Assembly: GCA_964035545.1 (NCBI GenBank)
Contig: OZ037770.1
Coordinates: 12,824,642-12,888,641 of the forward strand
From: Bugula neritina
Lineage: Eukaryota > Animalia > Bryozoa
Direction: 5' to 3'
DNA: 64,000 nt
Program-made: the position numbers and the translations under genes
Notes under the pieces: generated by a model
What the model saw: only the letters and a program-made list of their open reading frames with translations
Told to the model about the DNA's origin: nothing
Database searches by the model: none
Shown here: piece after piece, positions 38,201 through 63,782 of the stretch
Layout of the letters: every line of letters starts with the position of its first letter
How positions within the stretch are numbered: the first letter of the stretch is position 1

Positions 38201-39841
38201 AAAGCAATTTTAACTATGAAAAAATTGTAAAAATATTTTGCTCCCACTGGGACTCAAACCCTAGACTTCCAAGACCTCCACTACACCACAGGGCTATGAC
38301 GCTACTGGGTAAACTCAACACTAAATCCCGTCAATTCTTCAAACTCAACTGACCTCTCAACTCTTCAGAGAGCCACTCCACTACTACAGTTCACCAAAAG
38401 CCTAAGTATCTTATACAAATTTTGCTCTTACTGGGGTTTGAACTTAATTGACCTCCGGCTTGCAAGCATTAACATGCATTACTATACATTACCATGCATC
38501 ATTATGCATTACCATGCATTACTATGCATTACCATGCATTACTATGCATTACTACGCATTACTATGCATTACCATGCATTACTATGCATTACCATGCATT
38601 ACTATGCATTACCATGCATATTCATTACCATTACATCACAGGGGCTACAAGATTGGCTAACCTTTTTAACACCATACTGTGTGCATAAACACACATACTG
38701 CAAAGGAAATATCAGGTAAAAATCTAGGTTTAATCATTTTTATAACTATAAAATGACTAGTAATTTTAAATTCATAACATATTACATTCAAGCATATTGC
38801 ATTATGATTGGTTCTTTCACATTTCGCACTATATAGGTACATTCTTATTAAAATTAAATCATATGTTGCAACTTTCATATATTAGTTTCATATCTAAACC
38901 ACAATTTTGTGGTAAAGTTTTACCTCAAAACTTGAAACAGTTTCCAGACGCTTGTAGTACGTTACATATCCTGTCTGCAAGTCTATACACAGCAGATCTA
39001 CGTGAGTATGAGTCTCACCAACTCTATATGCCATACCTGAACTGAAAGATCTTATTTCTCCAGCAATGTTATAATGAGTTGAATTTATATGAGACCATCG
39101 CAGGTTATATCCACAGTAAACCCTGCATGTGAAAAGACAGTAAAAACTATAAGGGCAAAACGAGGTAGATATCGATAATGGAGAAATTGAGCCAATAAGC
39201 CTGTGTTCTAGATTAGAAATATAACAAAACAGTTATGGTTTCTACCAGCGCCCCAAACAATACAAAAATTAAAGGACTTGAGTAATCTCAATTTTTTCAC
39301 TACTGCTCGTGAATAGGCATGAAAGAAAATGATGGGTGGAAAGAAAACAAACAATCTAAATCTATCAGCTCTGAAACTTGAAGCACTGCTGATAGTATTG
39401 TAATTAGAGTTGAAACAAGCTGATTAATTTTCAGCATTACATAATGGTAGTGTAGTGGTATGCTGGTTTAGTAAAGCACGAAGTCAACGGTTGAAAATGC
39501 TAAGAAGGACATTCTGTCTTAATTGCTACTGTGCCACAAACGAAGGTGTATTTAACCCATGATTTAAAAGCTTTTCCATCAGGTGTTCTCACAGGAAGAG
39601 GCAACTATAGACTCAAGTGAATTTTTTAGTTTTATTAGACGTTCAAATTCAGTTTAAACTGTAAACATAATATGAATAGATATAATGGCAATAAGGAAGC
39701 TTATCAGCCACATGATGTTTAGGAAAAATCACAAAAATCCAAATGTTGATTATAAAAACTGGGATGGCAGAATTTGGGCTAAATTACTTACTGTGAAATT
39801 AAGTAAGTCAGATAATACAAAAGTACAGTTGCAACTTTCAT
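29252..39841 (-). CDS. Single-pass type I membrane receptor B (~802 aa), tandem paralogue of A, with a short tail
   Basis: 15 exons: 39841-39792 (MKVATVLLYYLTYLIS), 39122-38924, 38196-38091, 37457-37290, 37019-36840, 36545-36285 (NLALYKPTNQS..AVDG..WFVDL..CC, FTP-like), 35341-35120, 34471-34247, 34142-34026, 33407-33226, 32068-31948, 31253-31117, 30665-30524, 30192-30105 (TM), 29462-29252. Exon lengths of 50, 106, 180, 137 and 142 bp are identical to gene A. Confidence 0.82.
30697..30790 (-). mobile_element. tRNA-derived repeat, family 1
   Basis: Reverse complement reads GCAGTGTAATAGTTAGCACACTTGCTTGCAAGCCAGAGGTCTCAGGTTCGAATCCCAGTG. Confidence 0.6.
33425..33520 (+). mobile_element. tRNA-derived repeat, family 1 (best-preserved cloverleaf-like copy)
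   Basis: GTCTCTA/TGGAGGC acceptor-like stem with intact A and B boxes, but the family leader GTAGCGTTGAGTTTAC and an irregular anticodon arm. Confidence 0.6.
34775..34972 (-). mobile_element. tRNA-derived SINE, family 2
   Basis: GGTTCGAACTCC B box on the minus strand and a family-2 body. Confidence 0.6.
35767..35984 (-). mobile_element. Full-length tRNA-derived SINE, family 2, with target-site duplication
   Basis: About 218 bp, flanked by the 10-bp direct repeat CTATATATAC (35757-35766 and 35985-35994). Confidence 0.75.
36075..36232. mobile_element. Short non-autonomous DNA element with subterminal inverted repeats
   Basis: GCAGTAATGGAGAAATTG (36085) versus CAGTTTCTTCATTACTGC (36211-36228). 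Related copies at 39161-39310 and, inverted, at about 230-261. Confidence 0.55.
38468..38620. repeat. 10-bp tandem repeat (ATGCATTAC[C/T])n
   Basis: About 15 near-perfect copies; source of three spurious ORFs. Confidence 0.95.
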
Positions 39842-40744: not shown

Positions 40745-40980
40745 GTAGCAACGGTGTAATCACCTAGCAACAGTGTAGTCACCTAGTAACAACACAGCAA
40801 CCTAGCAACAGTACAGTAGCCTAGCAACAGTGTAGTCACTTAGTAACAGTGTAGTCACTTAGTAACAGTACAGTGGCTTAGCAACAGTACAGTGGCCTAG
40901 CAACAGTGCAATCACCTATATGCAACAGTGAAGTCACTTAGCGACAGCGCAATCACCTGGCAACAGAAGAGACACCTGCA
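40745..40980. repeat. 20-bp minisatellite (consensus close to CCTAGCAACAGTGTAGTCA)
   Basis: About 11 degenerate copies. Confidence 0.9.
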
Positions 40981-41882: not shown

Positions 41883-43934
41883 TCAAGAGTTATCATCTCT
41901 TCTGTTATAGCCATTAAACCCAGGAAAGAGGTAGAGTCTTCTCATGTGAGTGAGAGTATCCCAGGCTACAACCAGCTGTCCACTGTCCAACTTTTTCTTC
42001 AGACACAGTTTCCTGACTTTAGTCTGCACCTAAACATAATCATAAATAACTGACAGTTTCAATAGTTTAGATTCCCGAGTAGAGAAGTTATGAGGTTTGT
42101 GACATAAAGCCATGTGACCATGACTCAGTTATCAATATATGTAAACGAACCAACCTTCACAACTGGCATATTTTTTCTTTATTGAATAATCTAATTTTAT
42201 CACTATACTGATTAGCCAAATGTGGTGAGCTAAGTGGAAGATTGTGTTCACTAAAGCTTCACATGTTTAAATTGCTTTACATCTTTCCACATAGTACTGC
42301 TTTACAAGAGGTTCATTTTCAAAGTTAAACTTGTAGACTTACTTGTTTGAAAATAGTGTAGAGGTCATGGTGACAGGCATGTTTGTACATTGAAGATACC
42401 AGAGCTCTAATCATTAGAGATCCATACACACGATGTCTCTTCGATGTAAATGCTGTAACAGATCATATAGAAATACACAATTCAGCAAGCGCATATAATG
42501 GAAGTAATAATGCATACAGAAGTGTAATATAGTAACTGACTAACTCAAACTGAACTCACACTCCATACTGGATTTCACTACCAGCAAATCATCATAGTTC
42601 AGTCTAGTCATAGCCTCAGCTTTCTTATCTCCTGGAACTCCAACAGGGTGTCGTGCTTGTGTCCCTACACCCTCTCTCTGCGCCGGTTCAGCCACTCGTG
42701 CTGAGTCTATATCTCCGTCACCAACAGTTTTATCTTCTGGAACTTCAACAGGATGTGGTGACCCTGTCAATGCATCCTTTTCCAGAGCTGGTTCAGCCTC
42801 TGGTACTGAGTTTATACCTCCTTCATCAACATCTTCTTCAGCTGTGAAATAAACTGGCTATACAGAGAGATGCTAATAGGTGATTTATAAAACCACTGAA
42901 TTCTAACTATCTATTTTCTGCTGAGATGTATATCTATATACTCTGCAGATAGTCAACAGGCACTAATAACTTTGAGATAATATAAAGATAAACATTATAA
43001 GCATGTATCAAGGAACTACTAACTGCTCTACTTACAATCTTTAGTAGATTTTTTGGAGTTCTCTTCTTTTTTAGACTCGGAGTTTTTAGCTCTCTGGACT
43101 TTAGCAAGGGAAGGTGACACTACTTCGGCATCCTCTATCTGAGCTTTTCCAATATCAGTTGCTGGGTCTATACCTTTCTCACCAACATCTATCCTGGCTG
43201 TAACAATTATATGAATATTCAAAACTTTCAAATTGCTTATAGAAAAAACAAAATAAGCCCCCCTCCCCCGTTCAGAATAATGATAAAGAGTCATTTCATT
43301 CTATTTACTAAATTGGGACAGCAAAGCAGAAAATTTATCAAAATTACTTGTTATCTATATGCATATAATGTAGTGACTCAAAAATAATTGCTTCATACAA
43401 ATAGTGTTAGCTATATTTTGACTCAGCTGATGGTAGGTAAAGCTTACTTCCACTACAGGTTTCCAGAATAACAATCTTCGGTCTCCCAGCCATCCCGGGG
43501 AAGTTCAGTGGGGTCAACAGGTCATACACATCAGTGAGCTTCACTCTCCTCCCATCTACTCCATAGATGTAGTTGTTTACACCTCCATGAGTCATGATAA
43601 CCAACACATGACATCCCAGATCTTCATGTTCCTTTTGTTGGACTTCATCTTTGATGGTGGACAGAATAGCCTAAATAATTTTGTAGCAAAATACTGTAAA
43701 TAGGCTAGACGATGTCTCTTTTGACCATCATAAACACAAACATTATTATTGTACCAAACATACCGCTGCTTTCAGATCTGTATGTGTCACAACATCAAAC
43801 TTGAAAGCTTTCAACATGACTGAAATATTCTCAACATCAGTATCTGAACCTTGCCTACACAAATCTGGTCCCTCATCAAAGTTCTTGTTGTTGATTATAA
43901 GAGCTCTGCCTCTTTTCCGTGTCATAGTAAACAC
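41883..43934 (-). other. Caspase (C14A) domain exons, large and small subunit
   Basis: RGRALIINNKNF, R-x-GSDTD, VIMTHG (catalytic His), GRPKIVILETCSG (catalytic Cys), DDLLVVKSS, SKR....GSLMIRAL and TL...RLYLFPG all match caspase p20/p10 motifs. Confidence 0.92.
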
Positions 43935-46900
43935 CTGCAGATGTAAAGAACAAAATGGTTGGTAACTTTCTGAAAGAAATTGTTGTTATTTCTAAATATG
44001 GTAAATATCATTTTCGTCAGGTGACAGTTACCTTATCAGTGTTTGAAAAGAGCTTTTTGATTTTCAAGGTAGTAGTTCTTTCCAGTTTAAGTCTCATCAA
44101 CTTCATTTGTTCCCCTTCTTTATCAGGGTACAAGTACTCGTCTTCATCAGAAAGATCACTCAGATCATCATCAGCTGTGACCTCTTCAGTTCTTTTATCT
44201 GATTGGTTGTTATCTTCAACTACAAATATAAAACGATATAGTAGTATTTAAGTGCAACAGCATAACAGCGTGCCACCCTACAAGTTGAGCACTATACATA
44301 TAATCTTTCATAGGTGTGAATGATTTGCTCGATAAAAATTTGATTTCTGTGATAGACTTGAGTTAGTCGCTATAAAATATCAATTTGAACTAAAAAGCTG
44401 TTAAGCGACAGTATATTCGAAACCACTAGATTGGATTTAGTGCAGTTTTCTACCTGAAAGGTTGCTTTTCTCTTGCTGTCCTCTAGCAAGCAACTCACTC
44501 ACAGTTCTTTGAAAGGTCTCCAAATCATCTCTTGACATGCTCTCACCTAAATATTAGAAAACATGAATTAAAATATCTCGCATGAAAAAGACAATTTTTT
44601 ATATACTAATAAATTGTTAATGACAAAAAGATCTGTAAAGGATCTAATCTTTCAAAGGTTTTTTACTATCCCCATCTCATTAATACCATAAAAAGCATTT
44701 TTATTATTTCAATGAGTATCTTTTGGCATACAAAAATTTCAAGATGCTAAAATTTTTAGGAATTGTGGAAGAAACAGATACTACTGAAACTCAAATAAAA
44801 GAAGCATACATGGGTGGAAAAAAGCTGAAGGAACTTCCTCATCTTTACAAAGGGTTATTGAGGATCCCTGGTACCAGTTGACTAGGGGGGAAGATTTCAA
44901 GGAGCGGAGGCACCATTGAGGCCTTGTTATTTTCTCAACTTGAGAGTTGCCTAACAGCAAGCAGTGTCCACAGTGAACTGACGGAACCGGTCTGCATGCT
45001 GTCCATGTTTCTAGAACCTGTCTGAGGATGCTGTTGGTAGCATTAATCAGGGTCTGCCACATTCTGCTGATGTTTTCGGCGTCTGATGAAACGAATAGAA
45101 GCACTTTTCTTGATTTGTAATCGTGTATCAGCTGAGTGTAGATTTTATCATGATACACATTGGCTCCATTTCTCTTCACTTTGATTTTAGAGATTTCATC
45201 AGGAAACAGCTGCAGTAAACCAACTGTCATCTGGTGGGATACGTAGTGTGGTAGTGCCAGCCCATTGAATTCAATACCAACTAACAGAAACATGCTTTTA
45301 GGTGGTGAGAAGTTATGGTTGAAGTATTCCTTGGCAAACTGTGGCGCAATGAAGCATGAGTAAATTGGGTCTTTATCAGAAGCATCATGTAGTGGACCAT
45401 GTAGCAGACGGAAAGTCTTAAGCAGGCAAATAGCAACTGCCCAGTCCTGAGGCTCATGGAATCCAGATTCTTTTCTTATTAAATAGTTGAAAAGAATTTC
45501 CCTTAAAACACCTGTTTTAGTGAAATGATCTACAGACTCTTCAAAATCCTGTAGCTCAAATTTATCACCACCAAAATTAAGTAGTGAGAATTGATCACGT
45601 CGACACTGCCACACATTAGAATCATGATTATGCATTACGGTTAGAAGCTTGGTAACTTCTGATATCTTGTGGAAGATGTAAGGCTTCAGAGTATCCATAT
45701 CTTTGTACCACAATATCTTACCGCAGTCATGCATGTAGGTAAGAATTATGTCCAGCTGACTTGATTTAATCTGAAGGTTCTGCTGTTGGAAGGTGGCCAG
45801 GATACACCAGAATGAGCTGTAAGTAGACTTTAGAGAGAGAACTTTCTCATTCACCTCTTCCCAAATTAAAGGCAAAGACTTCACAAACTTTTGACTGCTT
45901 TGTAGAAGCGATTTCTTGATCTTGTCAAACACTTCATATCCATCGTCAGCTCCGACTTCATAAATGTCATCTTCAACAAACACCCTACCTGCTGACTCCA
46001 CAAAATGCTGAATTTGACAAAATTCTCCACCCAATGCTTTCTCCTCCTCAACAATCTCAACACTAATTTGATTCATTAGTTTGAGAAAGGTTGACTTTTG
46101 CTCCTGAAACTTGATGTTAGTGAATTTGTCTTTGTGAGTCAAAATGAGCTTTGGTGCACCCAAAGTTGGGTTAGCCAAATAGAGATGAGACATGTAATCA
46201 AAGGCCAATCTTCTCACAGCTTCTCTACTGGAAAACTCTGTAGAAAGGTTGTTGAATTCCGCCATATTGACTACAAAAACGGGAATACAATTTTGTTTCA
46301 GCGTGAGTTGATATGTCGCATGATACACTTCCTGTCCCCCCATGTCAAGGACACGTAGCACTGTTCCATCTACTTCAACTTCCTGAACATTGAAGACTTT
46401 TGTCGTCTCATCTATGGCAGCTTCAGGGCTTCTGTCTATTAAGACTCTCTTCCTCTCAGGACTTTGCAAGGTCTTGATTAGACTTGTTTTACCGGCCATA
46501 GAATTTCCCAGTACAGCTATTGTAGCAAAGGGGATATTTTTTCCAGAACCTTTAGCTAAATCCTTCAAATATTGTCTCACAGCATCTAATCCTCTCCGAC
46601 AGACTTCCCTTGGAGGAGATGTGAGAGCAAAACAACTATCTGTGTTTAGTCCTTGAAGCTGGGTCAGCTGTAATATCTCCTGGTCTAGAGACTTCAGAAA
46701 TTTATTGTCGGATACATTCAGCTCTTGCAGACTACTCAATGTGTACACAGAAGATGGGATGTTGGTAAAACTATTGCCTGATATGTCCAGTTTCTCCAAT
46801 TTTTTTAGACTTTGTACACTAAAAAGAAATGAGTGAGAGCTGAGCTTTAATTGAATGAGGAAGCATGTAAAGCAGATTGGAGTGATAGAATAAAATGGTA

Positions 46901-49900
46901 ATTTATGTGTAAACAAGAGAGCAACCTAGCTGTGAATATCATATCATAACAAGTCACTAAAACTTCTGCCCCTCAGACTTCTAAATTACAAGCCATCGTG
47001 TTAACCATCACAATACAAGGCTACTGGGAAATTTCAACATTATATTCAATATTTCTTATTAATTCACTATCTTTAATATCTTTCAAACTTTAATTCAGGC
47101 CACAGATAAATAAGATTTAATTCAAGATACAGTCGAATAATTGAGCTTTCATATTTATGGTAAGAGTAGGTAGGTAGGTAACACTTTTAAACATTGCAAG
47201 AACAGCCTTGCTATCTAAGGTTAGCTTATTTCAAACGTTTTTATACACGCTGCAAGCATATTTTTAATAAAAATTCAGTGAATTTAACTTTTATTCAACC
47301 TGCCTTTACACCACAATAACTACACTCAAGAAGCAATAGTTCTAAAACCCCAACTGATTGTAGAAAAACTCTGCGACACAACCTTGCAGTGGCTTTAGCT
47401 CAATTTCACTGTGGTTGTAGTAGCTTAAGTAATTATATCTAAATGTAAGCATTTATATAACTACATACCAAGTATTTACTATAACTATTGGTATTTATAT
47501 AACAACCAAATATTTACTAGTTATTACTTATTAGTATTACTCAGAGTAAGTATTATCATCATGTTAATTAGACTACAAGACTTTATCTGGTTTAGTATGA
47601 ATAACTTCTACAGTAAGTTACTACAGCCAATTAGACAATCATCGTAAACTACACAAACCAATACTAAGACTTATATAGTGTTGAGCATAAACAGGTATAC
47701 ATAACAGCAATAGCATAAGATTTAAAGTACTGCCTTTAATGAACCAGGTATAACTTCAATATAATGTGGTTTGCAGGAGGTTAGAAATAGTTTCATGTCA
47801 TTGGCTAATGACAAAGACTGCCTAATACAAGCAACTTTGTATGGTTTCTTTATCTATTTGAATAGAAAAACTCCCTGCAGTGGATAAGCCATTAATTAGG
47901 AGTGAGTGGCTAGCAAGTTGAACTTGTATATGTAACAACAACTAAAGCCATTAGATTACAAACTTGTAAATACACTGATAAAAATAGTAAAACCAAGATA
48001 AGTTAAATGTGCTGCAGGTACCTTGGATATGAATAGAGGTGACCATATTATAGTCATACTATTTACACGCAGTAGGGTACATAACCAAGTTCCTAACCAA
48101 CTAAAACTATATGGAATTATTAATGCCCTGTTTCTAGTGACTGCATGTGCACTATTAATAGGCTCTCAGGTTCACAGACAGCACAGCTAGGGACATACAT
48201 GTAATAGCCCCGTATATTAAATAAAAAAGCTCACTGTCTTACAAGTAAATAAATTTCATTGACTGACCTATTTATGGTTAATGTCATTATTCTTATGTAA
48301 GTAATTATTTAAGCAGTTAACTGCATGGGGCTGGCATATTAGAGTTTGGTGGTATTTTATAGGCTTTTACAAAGCTTCAAAACTTTCATTCTATGGTAAA
48401 TAAAATTTTTTATCAGAAACATCAACCTAGTAAAAATTGTAAATAATTACAATTTTGATTTCTTCGGCCATTTTATAGTCTCACGTACGAGTATTATATT
48501 ATGCATATTATATACACTGTACATGCTGTACATTATGTATATTACTGCCATCACTTCTATCAACTCTATAATCTTACCCACATTTCAAAATAGTTCTACT
48601 ATAATTATAGTTTAATGTATACATGCAGTATGTAGTGAACTATAGGCTATGATTTGGGCAATAAATCTTCACTGATGTCCTTTATTGTATTATTACTCAA
48701 ACATTACACTGGTTGGCATCATTAGACAGTAATTGACATTGATTGACATCGTCAAGACTACAATTGCAATGCAAAACTTACATAATCTCAGCATAAACTT
48801 ATATAAACAACATGAAAAATACAAACAGTTGCATTCCACAAAAAGAAAAAATATAATTAATATAAATGATTTATTTATTTTTGCTCTCTACAAATATCAA
48901 CTAGTTCGCTAGCTCCTGCTATTATCAAGTGTCAGATATTTGTTATGTAGCGCAGACTAGGGTGTAGAAAGCTTTTCTATAAAAGTGCTTAATATAGCTA
49001 AGGTAGTTGAGCAAACTAGCACTAATTTCGCTACACAGTACATACCTCTTTGGTAGAGTACTGAGTTTACAGCGACTGATATTCAACTCTCTCAGTGATT
49101 GTAAAGATGTGAACATCTCATCTGGTAGATTATCAGACAGGTTATTCCTTGACAGTTTCAGTATTTGAAGATTTCTCAGTTGAAGCATACTGTGACATAA
49201 ATGTAACACATCTTGTATTGATACAGTCATTATTAACCTGTTATACAACTAGGATTATAAAAATACTAAAAACTTGTAGTTAAAGTTTGCCCTCTGTGTC
49301 TTGCTATATCGAAGTGAGTTAATGTTAGATGGTGAAATGTTATATCATTTATCATACCATTTATCATATATTATATAATGACTCAACCATAAAGCTTTTT
49401 TCAAATATGCTATAGAAAAGTATTACACATTAGTAATAATTTTGAAAATATAATAATAATAATTTCTGTTGAACTGTAATCTTGTACACAATTTAAAAAC
49501 AAGTCTCATCAGGACATCATGAAACTAAACCCATATTTCATTCACCAATTATACACCTGAAAATAGATTTATTTGAAATCTGCTTAAAGACAATTAATTT
49601 TAATTTCAACAAAAATCATAAACCTCTATAGCTATTAGGTAGTCCCAGCAGTAATTGCTTTCTAACAGATATACAAATAAAACTTCTTTTCTAAATGTTA
49701 AGAAATACAGATCATATGAAAATATACCACAGTTATAAATACAGAGGTGATGTTTCTATTTCTATTACAGTATTATTATACAAGAATTGTTATCGCATTC
49801 ACATTCTGCTATAATTTTTACATTATGCATACAAGAGTTATTATATTAAACTGTATACACAGTACATACCTCTTTGGTAGAGTACTGAGTTTACAGCGAC

Positions 49901-52900
49901 TGATATTCAACTCTCTCAGTGATTGTAAAGATGTGAACATCTCATCTGGTAGATTATCAGACAGGTTATTCCTTGACAGTTTCAGTATTTGAAGATTTCT
50001 CAGTTGAAGCATACTGTGACATAAATGTAACACATCTTGTATTGATACAGTCATTATTAACCTGTTATACAACTAGGATTATAAAAATACTAAAAACTTG
50101 TAGTTAAAGTTTGCCCTCTGTGTCTTGCTATATCGAAGTGAGTTAATGTTAGATGGTGAAATGTTATATCATTTATCATACCATTTATCATATATTATAT
50201 AATGACTCAACCATAAAGCTTTTTTCAAATATGCTATAGAAAAGTATTACACATTAGTAATAATTTTGAAAATATAATAATAATAATTTCTGTTGAACTG
50301 TAATCTTGTACACAATTTAAAAACAAGTCTCATCAGGACATCATGAAACTAAACCCATATTTCATTCACCAATTATACACCTGAAAATAGATTTATTTGA
50401 AATCTGCTTAAAGACAATTAATTTTAATTTCAACAAAAATCATAAACCTCTATAGCTATTAGGTAGTCCCAGCAGTAATTGCTTTCTAACAGATATACAA
50501 ATAAAACTTCTTTTCTAAATGTTAAGAAATACAGATCATATGAAAATATACCACAGTTATAAATACAGAGGTGATGTTTCTATTTCTATTACAGTATTAT
50601 TATACAAGAATTGTTATCGCATTCACATTCTGCTATAATTTTTACATTATGCATACAAGAGTTATTATATTAAACTGTATACACAGTACATACCTCTTTG
50701 GTAGAGTACTGAGTTCACACCAATTGATATCCAACTCTCTCAGTGATTGTAAAGATGTGAACATCTCATCTGGTAGATTATCAGACAGGTTATTCCCTGA
50801 CAGTTTCAGTATTTGAAGATTTCTCAGTTGAGGTATGCTGTAACATAAATGGAACACATGTTGTATTGATACAGTCATTATTGACCTGTTATACAACTAG
50901 GATTATAAAAATACTAAAAACTTGTAGTTAAAGTTTGCCCTCTGTGTCTTGCTATATCGAAGTGAGTTAATGTTAGATGGTGAAATGTTATATCATTTAT
51001 CATACCATTTATCATATATTATATAATGACTCAACCATAAAGCTTTTTTCAAATATGCTATAGAAAAGTATTACACATTAGTAATAATTTTGAAAATATA
51101 ATAATAATAATTTCTGTTGAACTGTAATCTTGTACACAATTTAAAAACAAGTCTCATCAGGACATCATGAAACTAAACCCATATTTCATTCACCAATTAT
51201 ACACCTGAAAATAGATTTATTTGAAATCTGCTTAAAGACAATTAATTTTAATTTCAACAAAAATCATAAACCTCTATAGCTATTAGGTAGTCCCAGCAGT
51301 AATTGCTTTCTAACAGATATACAAATAAAACTTCTTTTCTAAATGTTAAGAAATACAGATCATATGAAAATATACCACAGTTATAAATACAGAGGTGATG
51401 TTTCTATTTCTATTACAGTATTATTATACAAGAATTGTTATCGCATTCACATTCTGCTATAATTTTTACATTATGCATACAAGAGTTATTATATTAAACT
51501 GCATACACAGTACATACCTCTTTGGTAGAGTACTGAGTTCACACCAATTGATATCCAACTCTCTCAGTGATTGTAAAGATGTGAACATCTCATCTGGTAG
51601 ATTATCAGACAGGTTATTCCCTGACAGTTTCAGTATTTGAAGATTTCTCAGTTGAGGTATGCTGTAACATAAATGGAACACATGTTGTATTGATACAGTC
51701 ATTATTGACCTGTTATACAACTAGGATTATGAAAATACTAAAAACTTGTAGTTAAAGTTTGCTCTCTGTGTCTTGCTATATCGAAGTGAGGAAATGTTAG
51801 ATGGTGAACTGTTATGTCATTCATCATACCATTTATGATAAATCATCATTTATCATATATTATATAATGACTCAACCATAAAGTTATTTTCAAATCTGAT
51901 ATAGAAAAAATATTACACAAATTATACTTATAAAAATATGATAATTATATTTTCTGTTGCACTGTAATGTTGTACATACTTTAAAAATAAATCCCATCAG
52001 GACATCATAGAACTAAATCCGTATATTTTATCCACCAGTTAAACATATATTTAAAAATTGATTTACTCAAAACCAGCCTAAATATAAACAGCTGTGCATG
52101 TCCTGCATGGTCTTAATTTTAACAAAACTTATAAACCTCTATAGCTATTAGGTAGTCCAAGTCGTAATTGCTTTCTAATGGATATACAAATAAAACTTCT
52201 TTTGTAAATGTTTAGAAATATAGATAATATGAAAATATAATACAGTTATAAATACAGAGGTGGTGTTTTTATTTCTATTACAGTATCATTATACAAGAAT
52301 TGTTATCACATTCACATTCTACTATATAATTATAACATTATATATACAAGAGTTATTATAATAAACTGTACACACAGTACATACCTCTTTGGTAGAGTAC
52401 TGAGTCCACAGTTACTGATATCCAACTCTCTCAGTGATTGTAAAGATGTGAACATATCAGGAAATAATGAAACTAAATTCCATATTTTTTCACCAATTAT
52501 ATTTAAATATATATTCATATAAAATCTGCCTAAATATAAATAGTTGTGCATGTGATACTTGATTTTAATTTTAACAAAAATCATAAACTTCTATACAATT
52601 AGGTAGTCACAGCAGTAATTACTTTTTAATAGATGTACAAATAAAACTCCTTTTCCAAATGTTTAGAAGTATAGATCACATGAAAATAGAATAGAGTTAT
52701 AAATACAAAGGTGGTGTTTCTATTTCTATTACAGTATCATTATACAACAAATATTATCATGTTCACATTCTGATATAATTATTACATTATGTATACAAGA
52801 GTTATTATATTGAAGTGTATACACACAGTACATACCTCTTTGGTAGAGTACTGAGTCCACAGTGACTGATATCCAACTCTCTCAGTGATTGTAAAGATGT

Positions 52901-54372
52901 GAACAAATCATCTGGTAGATTACCAGACAGGTTATTCCCTGACAATTTCAGTATTTGAAGACTTCTCAGTTGAAGCATACTGTAATATAAATATAACACA
53001 TATTGTATTAATATAATCATTATTGTTATTAATTGTTATACAATTAGGAATATGAAAATACTACAAAAAACCTTTAGGTAAAATTCGCCCTCCGTGCCTT
53101 GTTACATTGAAGTGCATTAATTTAAGGCAGTGAAATGTTATGACATATATAACATATATTATAATATAATGAATCTACCATAAAGTCATTTTCAAATCAA
53201 CTAGAAAAATTATTACACAGATAATTATTATGAAAATGTAAAAATAGTTTTTGTTATGTTGTAATCTTGTACACAGTTTAAAAACAAGTCACATCAGGAA
53301 ATAATAAAACTAAATTCCATATTTTTTTCACCAATTATATTTAAATATATATTCATATAAAATCTGCCTAAATATAAATTATAGTTGTGCATGTGATACT
53401 TGATTTTAATTTTAACAAAAATCATAAACTTCTATACAATTAGGTAGTCACAGCAGTAATTACTTTCTAATAGATGTACAAATAAAACTACTTTTCCAAA
53501 TGTTTAGAAATATAGATAATATGAAAATATACCACAGTTATAAATACAGAGATGGTGTTTCTATTTCTATGACAGTATCATTATACAATAATTATTATCA
53601 CACTCACATTCTGCTATAATTATTACATTATGTATACAAGAGTTATTATATTAAACTGTATATACCCAGTACATACCTTTTTGGTAGAGTAGTGAGTTTA
53701 CAGTGAGTGATATTCAACTTTCTCAGTGATTGTAAAGATGTGAACATATCATCTGGTAGACTGTCATCAGACAGTCTATTCCCTGACATATACAGTATTT
53801 GAAGATTTCTCAGTTGAGATATTCTGTAATATAACTATAATATAACACATGTTGTTTTGATAAAGTTTACTATACATAGAATACACTAATCTGTACTATA
53901 GAATACTACTATGTTATTATTTTCTCTCTCAGTAAATTATTTATATTTTATTACAATGTGTTCCATATTACCTAGCATAGTCAGCAGAGGAATTCATCCA
54001 CCTCAAACTCAGATAAGTGAGATGAGGGAACAGATTGTGAATATCTGGAGGAATGTCACCCCACAGTATAACATGAGTCACAGTATGATGTCTATTTTCT
54101 TCTCTCAACTCATTTATAGTGTAGCATTTAGCTGCGATATTCTTCATCCATCCTTTATCAGACTCATCTATACTGGCAGTGTTGAACCGTATGTCATATC
54201 TTTTCTCTGTAAATCAGATACACAAAGAATAGAAACATTATTTATATATTTATCCACAAACTGGATATAGTCTTTGATGTGCATCTGATAAATCAAAATA
54301 TATTCTCATGACAAAAACTGACTATTAAATTATATATACAATGTTTACTAAAACTGACTTACTTTCAGCCAT
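41883..54372 (-). CDS. LRR-Roc GTPase-COR-caspase fusion protein (~1498 aa; Roco family with a C-terminal peptidase C14A domain)
   Basis: 17 phase-consistent GT-AG exons: 54372-54363, 54206-53972, LRR cassettes 53823-53677, 52979-52836, 51661-51518, 50837-50694, 50013-49870 and 49189-49046, then 46818-44810 (LRR, Roc, COR), 44546-44454, 44219-44032, 43934-43764, 43670-43448, 43197-43036, 42841-42560, 42452-42343, 42029-41883. Total 4497 nt with no internal stop. Confidence 0.88.
44810..46818 (-). other. Exon with 3 LRRs, LRR cap, Roc GTPase and COR domain
   Basis: P-loop GNSMAGKTS, switch Thr (DETT), G3 DMGGQ, G4 THKD, COR motif LTYMHDCGKILWY, and the pre-Roc cap LTSPPREV...GLDAVRQYL. Confidence 0.92.
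49032..53830 (-). repeat. Tandem array of LRR exon+intron units (824-bp period in the youngest part)
   Basis: Exon ends at 49046, 49870, 50694 and 51518 are exactly 824 bp apart. More diverged units at 52385 (truncated), 52836 and 53677. Confidence 0.97.
52385..52459 (-). pseudogene. Truncated LRR pseudo-exon (donor kept; acceptor and first LRR deleted)
   Basis: Encodes DMFTSLQSLRELDISNCGLSTLPK|GTATGT, then joins directly to mid-intron sequence (ATCAGGAAATAAT, compare 53293) through an ATCA microhomology. Confidence 0.85.
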
Positions 54373-56328: not shown

Positions 56329-56635
56329 TGTGGTGGCTCGTGGAGCTACCAGCAGCACAGTACGCAGGGTCGCGTAATTGACCCGGAACGATGACAGCCA
56401 ATTAGCGGCTTTAATAGTTAGCAGCAGTAGTAGTTTTCCCGCTGTTAGTCAGTCGAAGTTAGAGTGTTGAATAGTCTAGATGTGTGGAATTATTATTGTA
56501 TTTGTATCGTTTTTTGTAATGTACTCTTGTGTTTAAAATATATACTCGTTCACTCGACTTATCCTGGTGCAGTTCTCTAGCAAGTAATTAGACTCTCTGG
56601 ATCGCATATCAACCCTAATTCTGAAAATTATAACA
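56329..56635 (+). repeat. 5' LTR (307 bp)
   Basis: Matches 63477-63782 with about 7 substitutions and 1 indel by eye. Confidence 0.97.
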
Positions 56636-56636
56636 G

Positions 56637-56654
56637 TGGTGGCAGCGGTGGGAT
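56637..56654 (+). promoter_or_regulatory. Primer-binding site, tRNA-Leu
   Basis: TGGTGGCAGCGGTGGGAT is complementary to the 3' 18 nt (ATCCCACCGCTGCCA-CCA) of eukaryotic tRNA-Leu(AAG/TAG); it starts 1 nt after the LTR. Confidence 0.9.
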
Positions 56655-56668
56655 AGTGCACATCCAAG

Positions 56669-57622
56669 ATGGAGACTGAAAACGCTGGAATGCAACCACC
56701 GGCAGTAGAAGGTGAGCGTAGAGACAATGCTGTAGAGACAATGCCTGTCAACCATGTAATAGAAGAGCGAAGGGTTCCGCGAGAACTAACTGAAGACCGC
56801 TACCGGTTAAAGGCGTCCACCTTCACGGGCGAAAAAGAGGTGGAGCAATTCATCCAAGAGTTTGGCGACGTAATGGACGTCGCCCAGTGGCCCCCTAGGG
56901 TGGCCCTGCTGAAGCTTAGAATGGCATTGATAGACAAAGCCAAGCCTTATGGGCTGGGCGTAGACATCGATAATATCTTTGCTTCTCTGCGGGCCCGCTT
57001 CGGCCTCTCTGCTACAGATGCCCGGGCCCGACTGCAAAGGTTGCGGCGTGATCCCCGCACCCCGCTGCGGGAACATGCCGCCGCGGTTATGAAGCTGGCA
57101 CAGATCGCATACAGCGACTTGCTCCCAGTCAACCGCTAGAGGTATACCCTTGACGCCTTCATAGCATCTGTCGACGATCTGGGTCTCCACCACCAGTTTC
57201 TAGCTAGGGGAGTCACCACCGTCGAAGATGCTCTGACAGAGGGGGAAGCTTACCTCCTAGCCAATCAGATGCATAAAAGTCGCAGAAACTCCCGCCAAGT
57301 GGAGGTAGACCGCGCGGACACGGCAGCGGGACGAGAGGAGGAAACCTCCGCAACGGCTGCCGTGGCTCAGTTAGCGACGGCATCGAAAGTCACTCAACTG
57401 ACAGACATGCTGGCCAAACTGATAGCAACACTGACACCCCAAACCCCAGTAGGTACCGCCACTGAGCCCGTGCAGCTACCGGCGCCGCCACCGGGGGAAA
57501 CGGTCAGTTTTTGCTGGGAATGCGGAAATCAAGGACATTTTCGCAGGTACTGTCTCTACCTAACTCCGGGGTTAAACTACCGCGGCCCGCAGATGTTCCC
57601 ACCTCTTGCGGGCCGGCGATGA
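56669..57622 (+). pseudogene. gag: gag with a CCHC zinc knuckle, interrupted by an in-frame TAG
   Basis: ORFs 56669-57139 and 57269-57622 share a frame; CWECGNQGHFRRYC = CX2CX4HX4C. Confidence 0.9.
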
Positions 57623-60600
57623 AACCTCCAGGGAAGAAGAAACGCAGGTCACCCAGACAGGTGCCGCGTGCTGGCAACCAACAGTAGCAACAGCCGCGAC
57701 GGACCAACAAGGGGCTCCGCCCCGCCGCTGCCTTTTTCGTGCCCCTCCACAATCGATTCGACGGGCTACCAGCCCAAGAATCCGGATGGGAGCCAGCAAA
57801 GGTAGCCGGAAATCTAGCCTCGGCACCTTCGAGGTCCACTTACGGCCATCCCAAGAGACCTCCTTCGCGACCCAAAGCGAGGGAGGTACTCCCTGCGAGA
57901 GTAAGGCCTGAAGAGAGAGTTCAGGTGCAGCCCCATGGGAACAGCTATTTCTTGCCCGGTAAATTGGAAGGCAAAGCTGTTACTTTTCTCATTGATTCAG
58001 GCTGTACCACGAACCTCCTAAGCCGCCAACTCTTCGACACCCTCAGTGCTAGGGTCAGGGACGAGATGGAACCATACGGGGGGGGGGGAGTATGGCACCC
58101 TAGCTGACGGGTCATGCCTTCCCTTCTATGGTATAATTGAGCTGACGGGACGAGTCCGTGATCAAACGATCCAAGAGACGTCTATCGTCAGTCAGCTCAA
58201 GGAGGACGCCATCCTCGGGATGCCATTCCTAAAATGGCACGGATGTCACATCGATTTTAGTAAATCTGCGATGGTGATGTCCGGGCGGGAACTCGCCTGC
58301 GTCGACAAGTTTGGCCGCCCTTTGGTGGGAGGGGTGCGGGTGGTACGCAACCGTACCATACCAGGCCGCTCCCGGGCTACCATTCACTGCAGGGTGAACA
58401 ATAGCCGGATCTCTGGACTCGGGGTAGTCGAAGGCGCGCACGAAAGGATCCAACTTGCCAGCAGTCTAAATCAGCTGACTGAGCAAGGGGAGATCTTGGT
58501 GCAGTGCGTCAACCCCTTTACCGAGTCTGTCAAGCTTCCGGCTGGGTCTATGCTGGGCCGTTTTCACTCTGTTCAGGAGGAGGACGTGGGCCCGTTGCTG
58601 GGTGATGCGACGGAGGCATCCTCTCGGTGCCCTACTCAAGGGCGAAGGACAGTCCCAGCACATCTCCGGGAGTTATATGAAACAGCCTGTGGCGGCTGCG
58701 CGAGTAACAAAGAACGCCAAGCTATGGCGAAGTTGCTACGCGACTACGGTGATGTGTTCAGCAGCGAAGATCATGACGTGGGGCTGACTGGAGTTGTCAG
58801 ACACGAAATACCGCTGACTGCAAGGACAGTCCCTATTCGGCAACTCACACGCCGGCTGGGGCCGGAGAAAGAGAAGGAGGTTAGCCAACAAGTACGGGAT
58901 CTTCTGGATCGCGGCCTCATAGAGCCCGCCCATAGTGCGTGGAGCTCGCCGGTCGTACTGGTCCGGAAGAAAGATGGCAGTTGGCGGTTCTGTGTGGATT
59001 ACCGCAAACTCAATAGCGTAACCATACAGGACGCCTACTCTCTACCTCGTATTGACGAGTCATTGGATGCCCTAGCCGGCAGCAAGTACTTCAGTACGTT
59101 AGACTTGCTGAGTGGCTACTGGCAAGTCCCTCTGAGTCCCGACGCCCAGGAGAAAGCGGCGTTTATCACACGGGACGATTTGTGGAAGTGGAAGGTGTTG
59201 CCTTTCGGGTTAACCTCCGCTCCAGCCACCTTCCAGAGGTTGATGGAGCAAGTCCTCAGCGGGCTCCATTGGAAGACACTGCTGATCTACCTCGATGATG
59301 TCATCGTGATCTCCCCAGACTTCGAGACGCATGTCAGTCGTCTGCAGGAGGTCTTCGAGAGGCTCCAAGGTGCCGGTCTTAAGCTCAAACCTTTCAAGTG
59401 CGCTCTATTGCAGCCGGAGGTCAAGTACCTGGGGCACGTTGTCGGTCGAAACGGCGTGGCAACGGATCTCGAAAAGGTACGGGCGATAGAAGACTGGGTC
59501 ACCCCCTAAGACTTGACCGGACTTCGGGCTTTCTTGGGGCTGGTAAGGTATTACAGGCAATACATACCAGAATTTGCGAGCATAGCGCAGCCATTAAACC
59601 GGCTCATCGCAAAGGGGGTGACGTGGCAGTGGACCCCAGTCGAACAAGGAGCGTTCGACCGCCTCAAGGGTTGCCTACTAACGGCGCCCATCTTGGTCTA
59701 CCCAGACCCCACTCTGGAGTACATCCTCGACACTGACGCCAGTGACCAAAATGTTGGCGCTGTGCTGTCTCAAGTGCAGAAAGGCCGAGAGGTAATAGTA
59801 GCCTACTACAGCAAGTCTCTCTCACCCACTGAACGAAATTACTGCATTACCCGCAAGGAGCTGCTGGCAGTAATCAAGTCAGTGAAGCACTTCAGATCAT
59901 ACTTATACGGCAGGAAGTTCCGGCTGCGTACGGATCATGCCTCGCTGATCTGGTTGTGCAAGAGAGCAGAGCCCTCTAGTCAGGTCGCCCAGTGGCTCGA
60001 AATCCTAGCTGAATTCTCGTACCGGATCGAACATCGGCCGGGCAAGAGACACAGCAATGCGGATGGTTTGAGCCGCCGACCTGATGGAGGTTGCAAACAG
60101 TGTCTCAACATCGAGAGGAGGGACGGAGGTTTCCCTGCGATGCGAGTTGGAGACATTAGCTCACCACGGAGCACCGTTTGACTGGGACCAGGGTCAACTC
60201 AGGCAGGAGGTTGACGAGTCCCCGGAGGTTGTACAGAACCTCCGCGCCAATCCTGTACTGGCCGATAATGTCCAGGAGCTGAAGAAGCTCCAAGAGGAGT
60301 TGCCTGGGGTAGTGGCAGACATATATCGGGCCAAAAAGGACGGGCGACGACCCAGGGAGGAACGCATACGGCAGGGATGCGCCGAGTTCCGGCTACTCTG
60401 CCAGCGTTGGGACTCGCTGAGGATCGGGCAGGATGGTCTGCCCCAGTGCCATACGCTGTGAGTTAATCTAGGACACTCACAAACAGGCCCACGCAGGGGT
60501 CAAGAGAGTGATCTCCAAATTACAACTCCGGTGGTATTGGCCCAAAATGGGGCGGGATGTCCGGCTCAGAGTAAAGCAGTGCGAAATCTGCCAGGCCAGC

Positions 60601-62092
60601 AAGCATGGCCGTCTCCCTGGTGAAGCGGGACGGCGGAGGCTATATGCTGGCAGGCCGTGGCAAGTGGTAGCTGTTGACCTGGTCGGACCCATGCCCCTGA
60701 CCCCCAGAGACAATAGTTGGATCTTAGTACTGACCGACCACTTTACTAGGTGGGCAGATGCTCTGGCTATCCCAGATGCGTCAGCCCCAACAGTGGCCAG
60801 GACGCTAGACCAACATGTATTGTTATTTCGGGCTCCCCAAACAGATACACTCTGATCAAGGCGCTCAGTTCCAGTCTCAACTGATAAGCGACCTTTGCCG
60901 CCTCTGGGGAGTAAATCAGAGCAGGACCACCCCCTACCACCCTCAAGGTAATGGGGTGGTGGAGCGCAACAACCGGATGCTAGGTGATGCGCTCCGGAGT
61001 CTCCTCCTTGGACGCAGCCAAGAGGAATGGGACAAGGTGTTGCCGCAAGTCATGCGTGCATACCGTAGCACCCCACACACCAGTACTGGTGAGACCCCAA
61101 ACCTCTTGATGCTTGGGAGAGAGACCCGCGTCCCTGACCATCTCACCTACCACGTTCCAGAGCTAGACAACTCGATTCACGAGTATGCCAGTGAACTAGT
61201 GGAACGAATGAAGGCCGCACACGATATACTGCATGAACAGCAGTGGAAGGTGTGACACGAAGATTCCGAGGAACCACCCCTCTATCAAACGGGAGATAAG
61301 GTGTGGATGGTCAATTACCGTAGGCGTCGCGGACAGGCGGCTAAGTTACAGCCTAAGTTCGTGGGACCCTACGTGATCGTCGAGGCTATGCCCAACCATA
61401 CGTACAAGATTGAGCGTTCAGGACAGGTGTCTATCCAGAATGAGTCTCGCTTAAAGCCGTATTGGGCTAGCCCCGACGCGGTGGGAGAAGCTCCCCCCCC
61501 GTTGTTGGAGCCCAGGAGGCAGACAACAACGCGTGGGCGACGGCGGCAGGGACCTGAATATGAAGTGGTCATACCGGGGGAGGAAGAATTGGTGAGAGAT
61601 GAGCGACTGCTTTTACCATCAGAAGCGTGTCCGCCACCGCCAAATCTGATTCCACCACTTCCAGAAACCGAGCCGGTTCCGGAAGTGCAAACCCCCATGG
61701 AGGGAGGGGCTCCATCCGGAGAACCAGAAGACATGACCACTAACGGTGAAGTAGAGACGCCACCAGAGGCCCCTACTAATACACCGACGAGTGCGTCACC
61801 TCCCCTAGAGCGGGGACAACATACGAGGCAACCCCCCGCATATTTGAAGGACTTCGTATGCGACTGCGTTAAAAGCGGCGCGTATGAAAGTCTAGGGAAA
61901 AACCGTACGAGAAAAGTATCGAGCAAATGTGGGAGTTGTCAACACCACGAAAATGTCAACTTTTGTATCGGCAGAAATAGAAACAAAATTCATCCGCCGG
62001 GTGCACAAAGTCTTAATCACGCACCCCAACCACGTTGCTCGATCTTTTCATACGCTGATGCAGTCAAGAGTAGACGTGTTCCTAATCAGTAG
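57571..62092 (+). pseudogene. pol: pol (protease, RT, RNase H, integrase), disrupted
   Basis: FLIDSG protease, YLDD RT, TDAS/RTDH RNase H, VDLVGP/HSDQG/NGVVER integrase. The protease frame is -1 relative to gag, with a possible slip site GTTAAAC near 57571. Frameshifts near 58080, 60130, 60460 and 60818; in-frame stops at 59507 and 61253. Confidence 0.93.
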
Positions 62093-62116
62093 TCCAAACC
62101 ATTTCACAAATTCAGT

Positions 62117-63189
62117 ATGTCTTACGACAACAGATCGTGGGGTGAGTTAACTATATCTTGATATGGAAACTAGATTGCATCACTCAGCTCCGACTCACTG
62201 AGTCAAATGAGCTGGAGATAGGCTAGTGAACTACCGTGGTAAGAACTCAGTTTGACTTAGAGATTTTATAATCTCATTGCAATACGTGTTCTATCTGACT
62301 ATTCACTACCATAAATCTCTACGAGGTAACTGAACGAGAAGTTGCCAGGCTATTCAAGCCGACAACACTGCAGTGTATTATACTAACGCTGTTGAAACTC
62401 TTTCAGGTTACACTCGACCCGTTACAACCAGGGTACGGGATAGAGCACTTCCCGCTCCGCATCCTGAGGAGTATACCAATGGTGACCGGCCCGAGCTACT
62501 GCGCCGCCGTTGGCGGTGGGTGTCGCCGGAGACAGAGGAGCAGATAGAAACAGCCTGGGGATCCAAAAGAAAGGACGCGGTGCCAGATTTGTGACGAGGA
62601 GTGCGCCTCTCACCGCTCCTTGAAGCTGCATGTCAACGCCCATCTATTGCTCACGTTCTGCCCCTGTGGATATAACGACGTCTACCCCTACCCCGTTACC
62701 AGACATCAGGCGACGGGCTGTTTCTCCGAAGAGAATTATGTGGTGGATGCCAAACTCTATCCAGAATTCTTAACTCTGATACGACCTCTAGTGAAGAAGG
62801 CAATGTTGTTGGCCGTCCTGACCTCGGGCTTCCAACGCGTACTAGACTACGCCAGGCAGCAATCTCCATTGGTGTCCGACCGCCCTCAGATTGCGTATAC
62901 CCCCGAAGAGTTTTCCTATCCTGAAGAAGGAGAAGTCTTCCCTACCCCGACGAAGAGACGGACCCGGTCTCCAAGTCCCCCTCTTCGTCGCAGACGGACA
63001 CCGTCCCCAGACTCTGCTCGCCTGGCCACAGTAGAGGAACGCCTCCTCCGACTGCAGGCTGAGTTTACCCAGTTAGCACCAGATCTGCTTAATACCACGA
63101 CGGGACTCTTTCAGCTAAAAGGCTCGGTGGGCCGGATTAAAAAGAAATTACGTACATGCCAGGCCAAACATGGGCGTGCCCAACACTGA
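62117..63189 (+). pseudogene. Spliced accessory ORF of the retrotransposon: tandem zinc fingers, RS/P-rich segment and coiled coil (one frameshift)
   Basis: Exon 62117-62141 (ATG...TGG G|GTGAGT) joins in phase to TTTCAG|62407. CQICDEECASHRSLKLHVNAH (C2H2) starts at 62581, followed by CPC-x12-H-x4-C. A 1-nt shift near 62557-62560 is needed to join the two frames. Confidence 0.65.
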
Positions 63190-63476
63190 CTCTGGTTCTG
63201 TTGCCCGGAATGATCCACAAGCCTCGTCCTCTTGGGAGACCCAAGACTATCGTGCAAATGCTTGACTGCTCGACAGCCGATTCCTTGTCCAATACCACAA
63301 CTAGCCGGTATTCTATAGCTGGCCAATTGTATGTGACCTGCTGTTATAATGACTCTGTCTGTTATTATGTATCTTTATATGTGTTATGTATTTTCTTTTG
63401 GTCTACTGATGTATGTGGTTAATGATGAACGTTTTTTTTATATATCAGAAAGAGGGCTTTCTGCTGGTGGGGGCGG

Positions 63477-63782
63477 TGTGGTGGCTCGTGGAGCTACCAG
63501 CAGCACAGTACGCAGGGTCGCGTAATTGACCCGGAACAATGACAGCCAATTAGCGGCTTTAATAGTTAGCAGCAGTAGTAGTTTTCCCGCTGTTAGTCAG
63601 TCGAAGTTAGAGTGTTGAATAGTCTAGATGTGTGTAATTATTAATGTATTTGTATCGTTTTTGTAATGTACTCTTGTGTTTAAAATATATACTCGATCAC
63701 TTAACTTATCCTGGTGTAGTTCTCTAGCAAGTAATTAGACTCTCTGGATCGCATATCAACCCTAATTCTGAAAATTATAACA
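63477..63782 (+). repeat. 3' LTR (306 bp)
   Basis: TG...CA ends, preceded by GGTGGGGGCGG and followed by the CTAC TSD. Confidence 0.97.

What the first reader, a model, noticed from the sequence alone, without database searches (positions are those of the whole stretch)
49046..53823. LRR cassette array with homogenised introns and exons hypervariable at the ligand-binding face
Seen: six symmetric phase-2 exons (five of 144 bp, one of 147 bp, two LRRs each), so any can be skipped, duplicated or swapped in frame. On the + strand the order is A,A,B,B,(truncated C),D,E. A and B exons differ at 9 of 144 nt, 8 of them in codons that change (7 residues). The central ~600 bp of the three 680-bp introns look identical. 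Variation clusters in the LxxLxLxxN/C positions: NISRCK, DINWCE, DISNCG, DISHCG, NITHCK; and KLSRN, KLSGN, YMSGN. Exons more divergent than introns is the reverse of normal constraint. Established: similar LRR exon shuffling is known for Roco genes of the brown alga Ectocarpus, and cassette-based LRR diversity for lamprey VLRs. Inference: intron-mediated unequal crossover or gene conversion plus diversifying selection, possibly with alternative splicing or somatic variation, generates a receptor repertoire.
Basis: partly seen in the sequence, partly recalled or inferred. Interest (0 to 1): 0.88.

Follow-up and report, generated by a model that had tools for sequence, protein, structure and literature searches.

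The report
Recombining LRR cassettes, bryozoan Roco-caspase
A moss animal (Bugula neritina) gene builds the sensor arm of a one-chain sensor–GTPase–caspase protein from interchangeable two-repeat exons that are copied, lost and reshuffled in the germline and diversify mainly at the predicted binding face, as expected of an untested immune or cell-death receptor; shuffling inside the body is not shown.

Summary
The array is real. It is the LRR arm of an intact gene (41883-54372, minus strand, about 1,500 codons: LRR–Roc–COR–caspase), one of at least 66 paralogues in a genome matching Bugula neritina tzBugNeri2.1. Six phase-2 cassettes and one broken one are confirmed. Across 77 distinct family cassettes, omega is about 1.9 at exposed LRR positions and about 0.7 elsewhere. 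A syntenic orthologue from a lineage about 7% diverged has at least 4 cassettes, none pairing 1:1 with these, so this array has turned over; a control paralogue kept 5:5 orthologous cassettes. One correction: 'exons more divergent than introns' holds only for A versus B. It reflects recent triplication of one intron (4 of 5 intron differences lie within 50 nt of the acceptor), and the older units show the reverse. Best reading: germline unequal crossover or conversion plus diversifying selection on a candidate intracellular receptor, convergent with brown-algal ROCO genes. This scan already noted the same family at many other loci of this genome.

The parts
54363..54372 (-). First coding exon (Met-Ala-Glu, 10 nt, phase-1 donor)
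   Evidence: conserved in L027, L008, L013
53972..54206 (-). N-terminal cap exon, phase 1 in, phase 2 out
   Evidence: homologue in 13 other loci; weak match to Watersipora P0035 N-terminus via L027
53677..53823 (-). LRR cassette E (147 nt, two LRRs)
52836..52979 (-). LRR cassette D (144 nt)
52385..52459 (-). Broken cassette C: second LRR and donor kept, acceptor and first LRR deleted at a joint with about 4 nt of microhomology; a cryptic AG near 52526 would give an in-frame 141-nt exon
51518..51661 (-). LRR cassette B2
50838..51517 (-). 680-nt intron copy with B-type acceptor flank (5 differences from the other two)
50694..50837 (-). LRR cassette B1 (identical to B2)
50014..50693 (-). 680-nt intron copy
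49870..50013 (-). LRR cassette A2
49190..49869 (-). 680-nt intron copy, identical to 50014-50693
49046..49189 (-). LRR cassette A1 (identical to A2; unique donor flank after 14 nt)
44810..46818 (-). Single exon: three LRRs, Roc GTPase (G1, G3, G4 motifs intact) and COR
   Evidence: (Roc E=2e-8, COR-A E=1e-3)
44454..44546 (-). Linker exon
44032..44219 (-). Acidic linker exon
43764..43934 (-). Caspase large subunit, exon 1
   Evidence: Peptidase_C14, E=5e-9
43448..43670 (-). Caspase large subunit, exon 2, with His-Gly and ETCSG (QACRG-equivalent Cys)
   Evidence: CED-3 E=2e-9, caspase-8 E=1e-8
42560..43197 (-). Two exons (43036-43197, 42560-42841) of a long, fast-evolving inter-subunit linker
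   Evidence: 24% nucleotide divergence from L027
41883..42452 (-). Caspase small subunit exons (42343-42452, 41883-42029) and stop codon
   Evidence: (match to Watersipora P0043)

Best explanation
The array encodes the variable LRR solenoid of a cytosolic LRR–Roc–COR–caspase protein from a large bryozoan family. SHOWN: each cassette is a symmetric phase-2 exon of two LRRs, so gain or loss keeps the frame; this array has gained, lost and homogenised cassettes since a split about 7% deep; exposed strand and loop residues evolve faster than neutral DNA while core residues are nearly fixed. INFERRED (mechanism of the array): misaligned intron+exon units undergo germline unequal crossover and conversion; the latest events triplicated one 680-nt intron and doubled cassettes A and B, with breakpoints at exon edges; selection keeps binding-face codons different. 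INFERRED (function, from known Roco and initiator-caspase biology): a fast-changing ligand, most likely pathogen-derived, binds the concave LRR face, shifts the nucleotide-dependent Roc–COR dimer state and brings two caspase domains together to trigger cell death or inflammatory proteolysis without an adaptor.
For: Intact frame exon by exon with GTPase motifs and the caspase His/Cys. At least 66 paralogues; 83 intact cassettes in 21 cassette-bearing stretches, 2-8 per stretch. Highest entropy at positions 14, 16, 38, 39, 41; five positions invariant in amino acid. Codon model: omega about 1.9 for all 12 motif x-positions (2dlnL about 18 against omega=1), 2.6 for eight of them (about 30), about 0.7 elsewhere. 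34 disjoint within-locus pairs: pN 0.257 at x-positions against pS 0.119 elsewhere, p about 1e-14. Clean 1:1 orthologous cassettes L020/L035: pN 0.151 (8 positions) against intron 0.072, p=0.01; framework pN 0.040. Syntenic orthologue L027: 4 cassettes against 6+1; window A, B and D differ from each other at 9-13 nt but from L027 cassettes at 16-23 nt; the 680-nt intron has one counterpart there at 7.6%. The Watersipora homologue uses 141-nt phase-2 two-LRR exons too, and its model puts beta-strands at motif positions 3-5, directly before the variable residues.
Against: No ligand, expression, splicing or activity data. Recombination can inflate omega, and the eight-position set was chosen after seeing the entropy table. 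The neutral baseline against L027 is uneven (introns 7.5-18%, Roc–COR synonymous sites 21%). L027 is a metagenome contig that could have collapsed identical units. The distance-dependent incompatibility test for recombination within exons was not significant (p=0.11-0.55). The ETCSG motif departs from QACRG, so protease activity and specificity are uncertain. The concave-face assignment rests on the LRR motif and a homologue's secondary structure, not on coordinates of this protein.
Confidence: 0.72

Rival explanations
1. Same array, but the ligand is a self/non-self marker of neighbouring colonies (allorecognition or chimerism control) and not a pathogen product.
For: Colonial animal; extreme diversification at binding positions; a death effector in the same chain.
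Against: No signal peptide or membrane segment is apparent in the exon set (by inspection), so the sensor is cytosolic; a dispersed family of 66 or more genes with frozen and active arrays resembles NLR repertoires more than a single histocompatibility locus. One literature search found nothing on bryozoan LRR allorecognition.
Confidence: 0.08
2. Diversity is multiplied within an individual, by combinatorial cassette skipping (Dscam or Ectocarpus-like) or by somatic recombination between near-identical introns.
For: All cassettes are symmetric phase 2; 860-nt and 618-nt perfect identity tracts are good recombination substrates; alternative LRR splicing is reported for Ectocarpus ROCO genes (PMC11378527).
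Against: No transcript or read evidence; no detached or antisense cassettes seen in the fetched stretches; no intronic inverted repeats in the array at the settings used; with AA and BB identical, this gene offers only four distinct cassettes. Germline events explain everything seen.
Confidence: 0.12
3. Neutral tandem-repeat turnover with relaxed constraint on surface residues; no diversifying selection.
For: The A/B exon–intron contrast is explained by recombination tracts alone; framework omega of about 0.7 is high; Roc–COR synonymous divergence from L027 (0.21) is near x-position pN (0.28).
Against: Omega above 1 by likelihood; pN exceeds intron divergence in non-recombined orthologous cassettes; many within-locus pairs show 5-11 nonsynonymous and 0-1 synonymous changes at x-positions with almost none elsewhere.
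Confidence: 0.05
4. The AA (and BB) duplicates are assembly artefacts.
For: 49032-49891 is 100% identical to the stretch 824 nt on; reads could not be examined.
Against: The matching assembly is PacBio HiFi at 132x with hifiasm (PMC11480708), whose reads normally span 5 kb; B1 and B2 have different flanks; paralogue L009 has four identical cassettes separated by introns of 313, 289 and 339 nt, which a duplication artefact would not give. Removing one A and one B would not change the family-level result.
Confidence: 0.03

Closest known systems
Brown-algal ROCO genes with shuffled LRR exons (Ectocarpus, PMC3341825; four brown algae, PMC11378527)
   Same: LRR–Roc–COR; LRRs on symmetric phase-2 exons; positive selection on concave-face residues; gene birth and death; proposed immune role.
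   Different: Animal; two LRRs per 141-147-nt exon instead of one per 72-nt exon; a C-terminal caspase (the word does not occur in PMC11378527); no antisense intronic LRR exons seen; alternative splicing not tested here.
Bacterial LRR–AP-GTPase(Roc)–COR–effector conflict proteins (PMC8195603)
   Same: Rapidly evolving N-terminal LRRs, Roc–COR switch, C-terminal effector that can be a caspase; multiple paralogues per genome.
   Different: No introns or exon cassettes in bacteria; those systems are predictions too; relationship not tested by phylogeny.
MFHAS1/MASL1-like animal Roco proteins; Owenia ROC-caspase (PMC11463336)
   Same: Watersipora homologues carry the automatic MFHAS1-like name; a caspase with a ROC pro-domain was noted once in an annelid; Lingula has LRR–Roc–COR–CARD proteins.
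   Different: Vertebrate MFHAS1 is single-copy and has no caspase (own knowledge); no cassette array, expansion or selection was described for the annelid gene in the passages read.
Lamprey variable lymphocyte receptors
   Same: LRR cassettes with a hypervariable concave face; a family cassette matches VLRA/VLRB structures by sequence.
   Different: VLRs are extracellular and assembled somatically from flanking donor cassettes into an incomplete germline gene (own knowledge); this gene is complete, cytosolic and its cassettes are in-frame exons.

Membership tests
Roco proteins | Roc GTPase domain directly followed by COR | tested here: met
   Pfam Roc E=2e-8 and COR-A E=1e-3 (below its cut-off) in one exon; G1, G3 and G4 motifs present; homologues carry Roc and COR-A
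Roco proteins | GTP binding/hydrolysis and COR-mediated dimerisation | not testable with these tools
   needs biochemistry
Caspases (C14A) | Large and small subunits with catalytic His and Cys | tested here: met
   His-Gly and ETCSG align with CED-3 and caspase-8; small subunit exons intact
Caspases (C14A) | QACxG motif and Asp-specific activity | tested here: inconclusive
   ETCSG, conserved in L027; the two S1 arginines appear present by eye; activity not testable
Brown-algal exon-shuffled ROCO design | LRRs on symmetric phase-2 exons | tested here: met
Brown-algal exon-shuffled ROCO design | One LRR per 72-nt exon | tested here: not met
   two LRRs per 144/147-nt exon; works like it, not a member of that clade
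Brown-algal exon-shuffled ROCO design | Positive selection on concave-face residues | tested here: met
   with the recombination caveat
Brown-algal exon-shuffled ROCO design | Alternative splicing of LRR exons | not tested
VLR-type somatic assembly | Incomplete germline gene with flanking donor cassettes | tested here: not met
   gene is complete and in frame; cassettes are exons inside genes
VLR-type somatic assembly | Soma differs from germline | not testable with these tools
   no reads

The most novel reading that the evidence does not exclude
Bryozoan colonies diversify these sensor–caspase receptors within an individual, by combinatorial cassette splicing or mitotic recombination between identical introns, so that zooids or cells of one colony carry different LRR arms: an anticipatory immune or self/non-self repertoire in a lophotrochozoan.
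Probability: 0.1. Interest if true: 0.92.

Novelty: new variant of a known kind. Interest (0 to 1): 0.64.

Why it matters
It places the exon-cassette Roco design, so far described in brown algae, in an animal and couples it to a caspase in one chain, giving a concrete candidate for an NLR-like receptor family in a phylum with almost no molecular immunology. This locus shows the turnover directly: a recombining array beside a frozen control over the same lineage split. The modular exons make specificity testable by cassette swaps, and the protein is a natural reporter of how Roc–COR switches control an effector, an open question for LRRK2-type proteins.

Tried and rejected
The spliced model was checked and searched exon by exon; the joined protein was neither searched nor folded. 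L028/L029 first looked like an allele lacking cassettes D-A, but their contigs start inside the last intron, so no copy number can be read: rejected. A metagenome scan and protein search with a neighbouring gene gave no baseline from the same sample; L020/L035 supplied one. The within-exon recombination test was not significant. No transcript-length Bugula protein was found. Literature searches for bryozoan Roco genes or LRR allorecognition found nothing relevant; the library lacks most subscription papers. Rejected readings: exon>intron divergence as proof of selection; the 680-nt intron as a mobile or family-wide element; VLR membership.

Full report
Observation. On the minus strand there are six open exons with AG/GT ends, all phase 2 at both ends: A1 49046-49189, A2 49870-50013, B1 50694-50837, B2 51518-51661, D 52836-52979 (144 nt) and E 53677-53823 (147 nt), each with two LRRs, plus the 3' half of a seventh (C, 52385-~52459). 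A1 equals A2 and B1 equals B2. A and B differ at 9 nt, one silent and eight in seven changed codons. Two of the 680-nt introns are identical and the third differs at five positions. The intron has no match elsewhere in the genome.

The gene and the organism. Checked exon by exon, the cassettes sit in an unbroken frame from a start exon at 54372 to a stop at 41883, about 1,500 codons: cap exon, six cassettes, one 2,009-nt exon with three more LRRs and Roc–COR, two linkers, and a complete caspase whose His-Gly and ETCSG align with CED-3 and caspase-8, with a linker of about 150 residues between the subunits. The genome (216.0 Mb, 321 sequences, longest 35.64 Mb) matches Bugula neritina tzBugNeri2.1, a 132x PacBio HiFi assembly (PMC11480708). 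The best named homologues are from the bryozoan Watersipora. The Roc–COR exon has at least 66 paralogues at 58-78% identity, only 66 of 192 candidates being scored.

Is it an artefact? Indirect evidence favours reality: HiFi reads normally exceed the 5-kb array, B1 and B2 have different flanks, and paralogue L009 has four identical cassettes separated by introns of different length.

Where the variation lies. From the window, 20 fetched stretches of the same genome and one orthologue I extracted 83 intact cassettes; 77 distinct 144-nt ones were analysed. Entropy peaks at positions 14, 16, 38, 39 and 41, with 19, 36 and 43 next; these are mostly positions 5, 7, 8 and 10 of the LxxLxLxxN/CxL motif. 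Five positions, including the Cys, are invariant. A model of the Watersipora homologue (pLDDT 79, pTM 0.80) is an LRR solenoid with strands at motif positions 3-5. By established LRR geometry this puts the variable residues on the concave face and the adjoining loop; I did not have coordinates for this protein. Codon models give omega about 1.9 for all twelve x-positions (2dlnL about 18 against neutrality), 2.6 for eight of them, and about 0.7 elsewhere. Disjoint within-locus pairs agree (pN 0.257 against pS 0.119). Recombination can inflate such values, so the cleanest test is locus L020 against its orthologue L035, where five cassettes pair 1:1: pN at the eight positions is 0.151 against intron divergence 0.072 (p=0.01), and framework pN is 0.040.

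What the homogenised introns mean. The A/B contrast (9/144 against 5/680) is significant, but four of the five intron differences lie in the 50 nt before the acceptor, where divergence equals the exon's. The diverged tract is exon plus acceptor flank; the intron core is simply younger. A metagenome contig, L027, is syntenic over the whole gene and its 3' flank, and its unique introns 5' of Roc–COR are 7.5% diverged, like the control locus. It has four cassettes (a minimum, if identical units collapsed). The 680-nt intron is closest to one of its introns (7.6%, sharing a 22-nt deletion), so that intron was triplicated after the split. Window cassettes A, B and D differ from each other at 9-13 nt but from L027 cassettes at 16-23 nt, while the older window introns differ from each other by 11-18%. 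A parsimonious history (inferred) is B-intron-A expanded by two unequal crossovers, one just before the B acceptor and one in the 36 nt shared around the donor, with separate conversion among exons and a microhomology deletion that broke C. Arrays differ in tempo: this one turned over while L020 stayed frozen.

How it probably works. Shown: in-frame modularity, germline turnover, accelerated change at exposed positions, intact GTPase and caspase motifs. Inferred from Roco and initiator-caspase biology (own knowledge): a cytosolic ligand bound by the LRR arm changes the Roc–COR dimer state and activates the caspase by proximity. An arms race with pathogens is the simplest cause of the selection (0.72). 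Within-individual diversification (0.12), allorecognition (0.08), neutral turnover (0.05) and artefact (0.03) are the rivals. Nothing here shows splicing variation or somatic change, and with only four distinct cassettes this gene alone could yield a modest repertoire.

Comparison with what is known. Brown-algal ROCO genes have phase-2 LRR exons, shuffling, concave-face selection and alternative splicing (PMC3341825, PMC11378527), but one LRR per 72-nt exon and no caspase mentioned. Bacterial LRR–Roc–COR proteins with variable effectors including caspases are predicted conflict systems (PMC8195603). A ROC-caspase was noted in Owenia (PMC11463336). The Watersipora homologue has 141-nt two-LRR phase-2 exons and several Watersipora proteins carry the caspase, so the design is older than the genus. 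I found no paper describing it in bryozoans, within a library that lacks most subscription journals. It fails VLR membership. Earlier notes of this scan describe the same family at many loci of this genome; they agree with the reading I had reached before looking and are not independent support.

Verdict. A real member of an apparently undescribed bryozoan family; a new variant of a known kind. This locus adds a dated example of array turnover with a control, and a correction of the intron argument. The joined protein was not searched or folded. Interest 0.64.

Noticed in passing
window 56329-63782: Ty3/gypsy-type LTR retrotransposon about 2 kb upstream of the start codon; LTRs 97-98% identical; RT, RNase H and integrase pieces lie in several frames. 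Observed only.
   Followed up: partly
window 52385-52527: A cryptic acceptor upstream of broken cassette C would give an in-frame 141-nt exon with a non-LRR first half.
   Followed up: partly
L009:4210-7136 (G000 C6, about 15.67 Mb): Paralogue with eight cassettes, four identical, separated by introns carrying long (TA)n tracts of different length next to the donor.
   Followed up: partly
window 42560-43197 against L027: The caspase inter-subunit linker exons are 24% diverged from the orthologue, against 6-8% for the catalytic exons; relaxed or under selection from pathogen proteases.
   Followed up: no
window 44810-46818 against L027: Synonymous divergence in Roc–COR (0.21) is far above that of the upstream introns (0.075) and of cassette framework codons (0.05); unexplained.
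   Followed up: no
L020:6682-6825: A cassette with a GC donor where the orthologue L035 has GT.
   Followed up: no
window about 19200-39300: Minus-strand multi-exon gene or genes with internally repeated modules; no significant Pfam match for the six pieces tried.
   Followed up: partly
window 38466-38619 and 40746-40966: 10-nt and 19-nt tandem repeats; the 19-nt array is conserved in the orthologous contig L027.
   Followed up: no
P0057, P0095 (Lingula anatina): Brachiopod LRR–Roc–COR proteins with a CARD, a possible adaptor-using counterpart.
   Followed up: no
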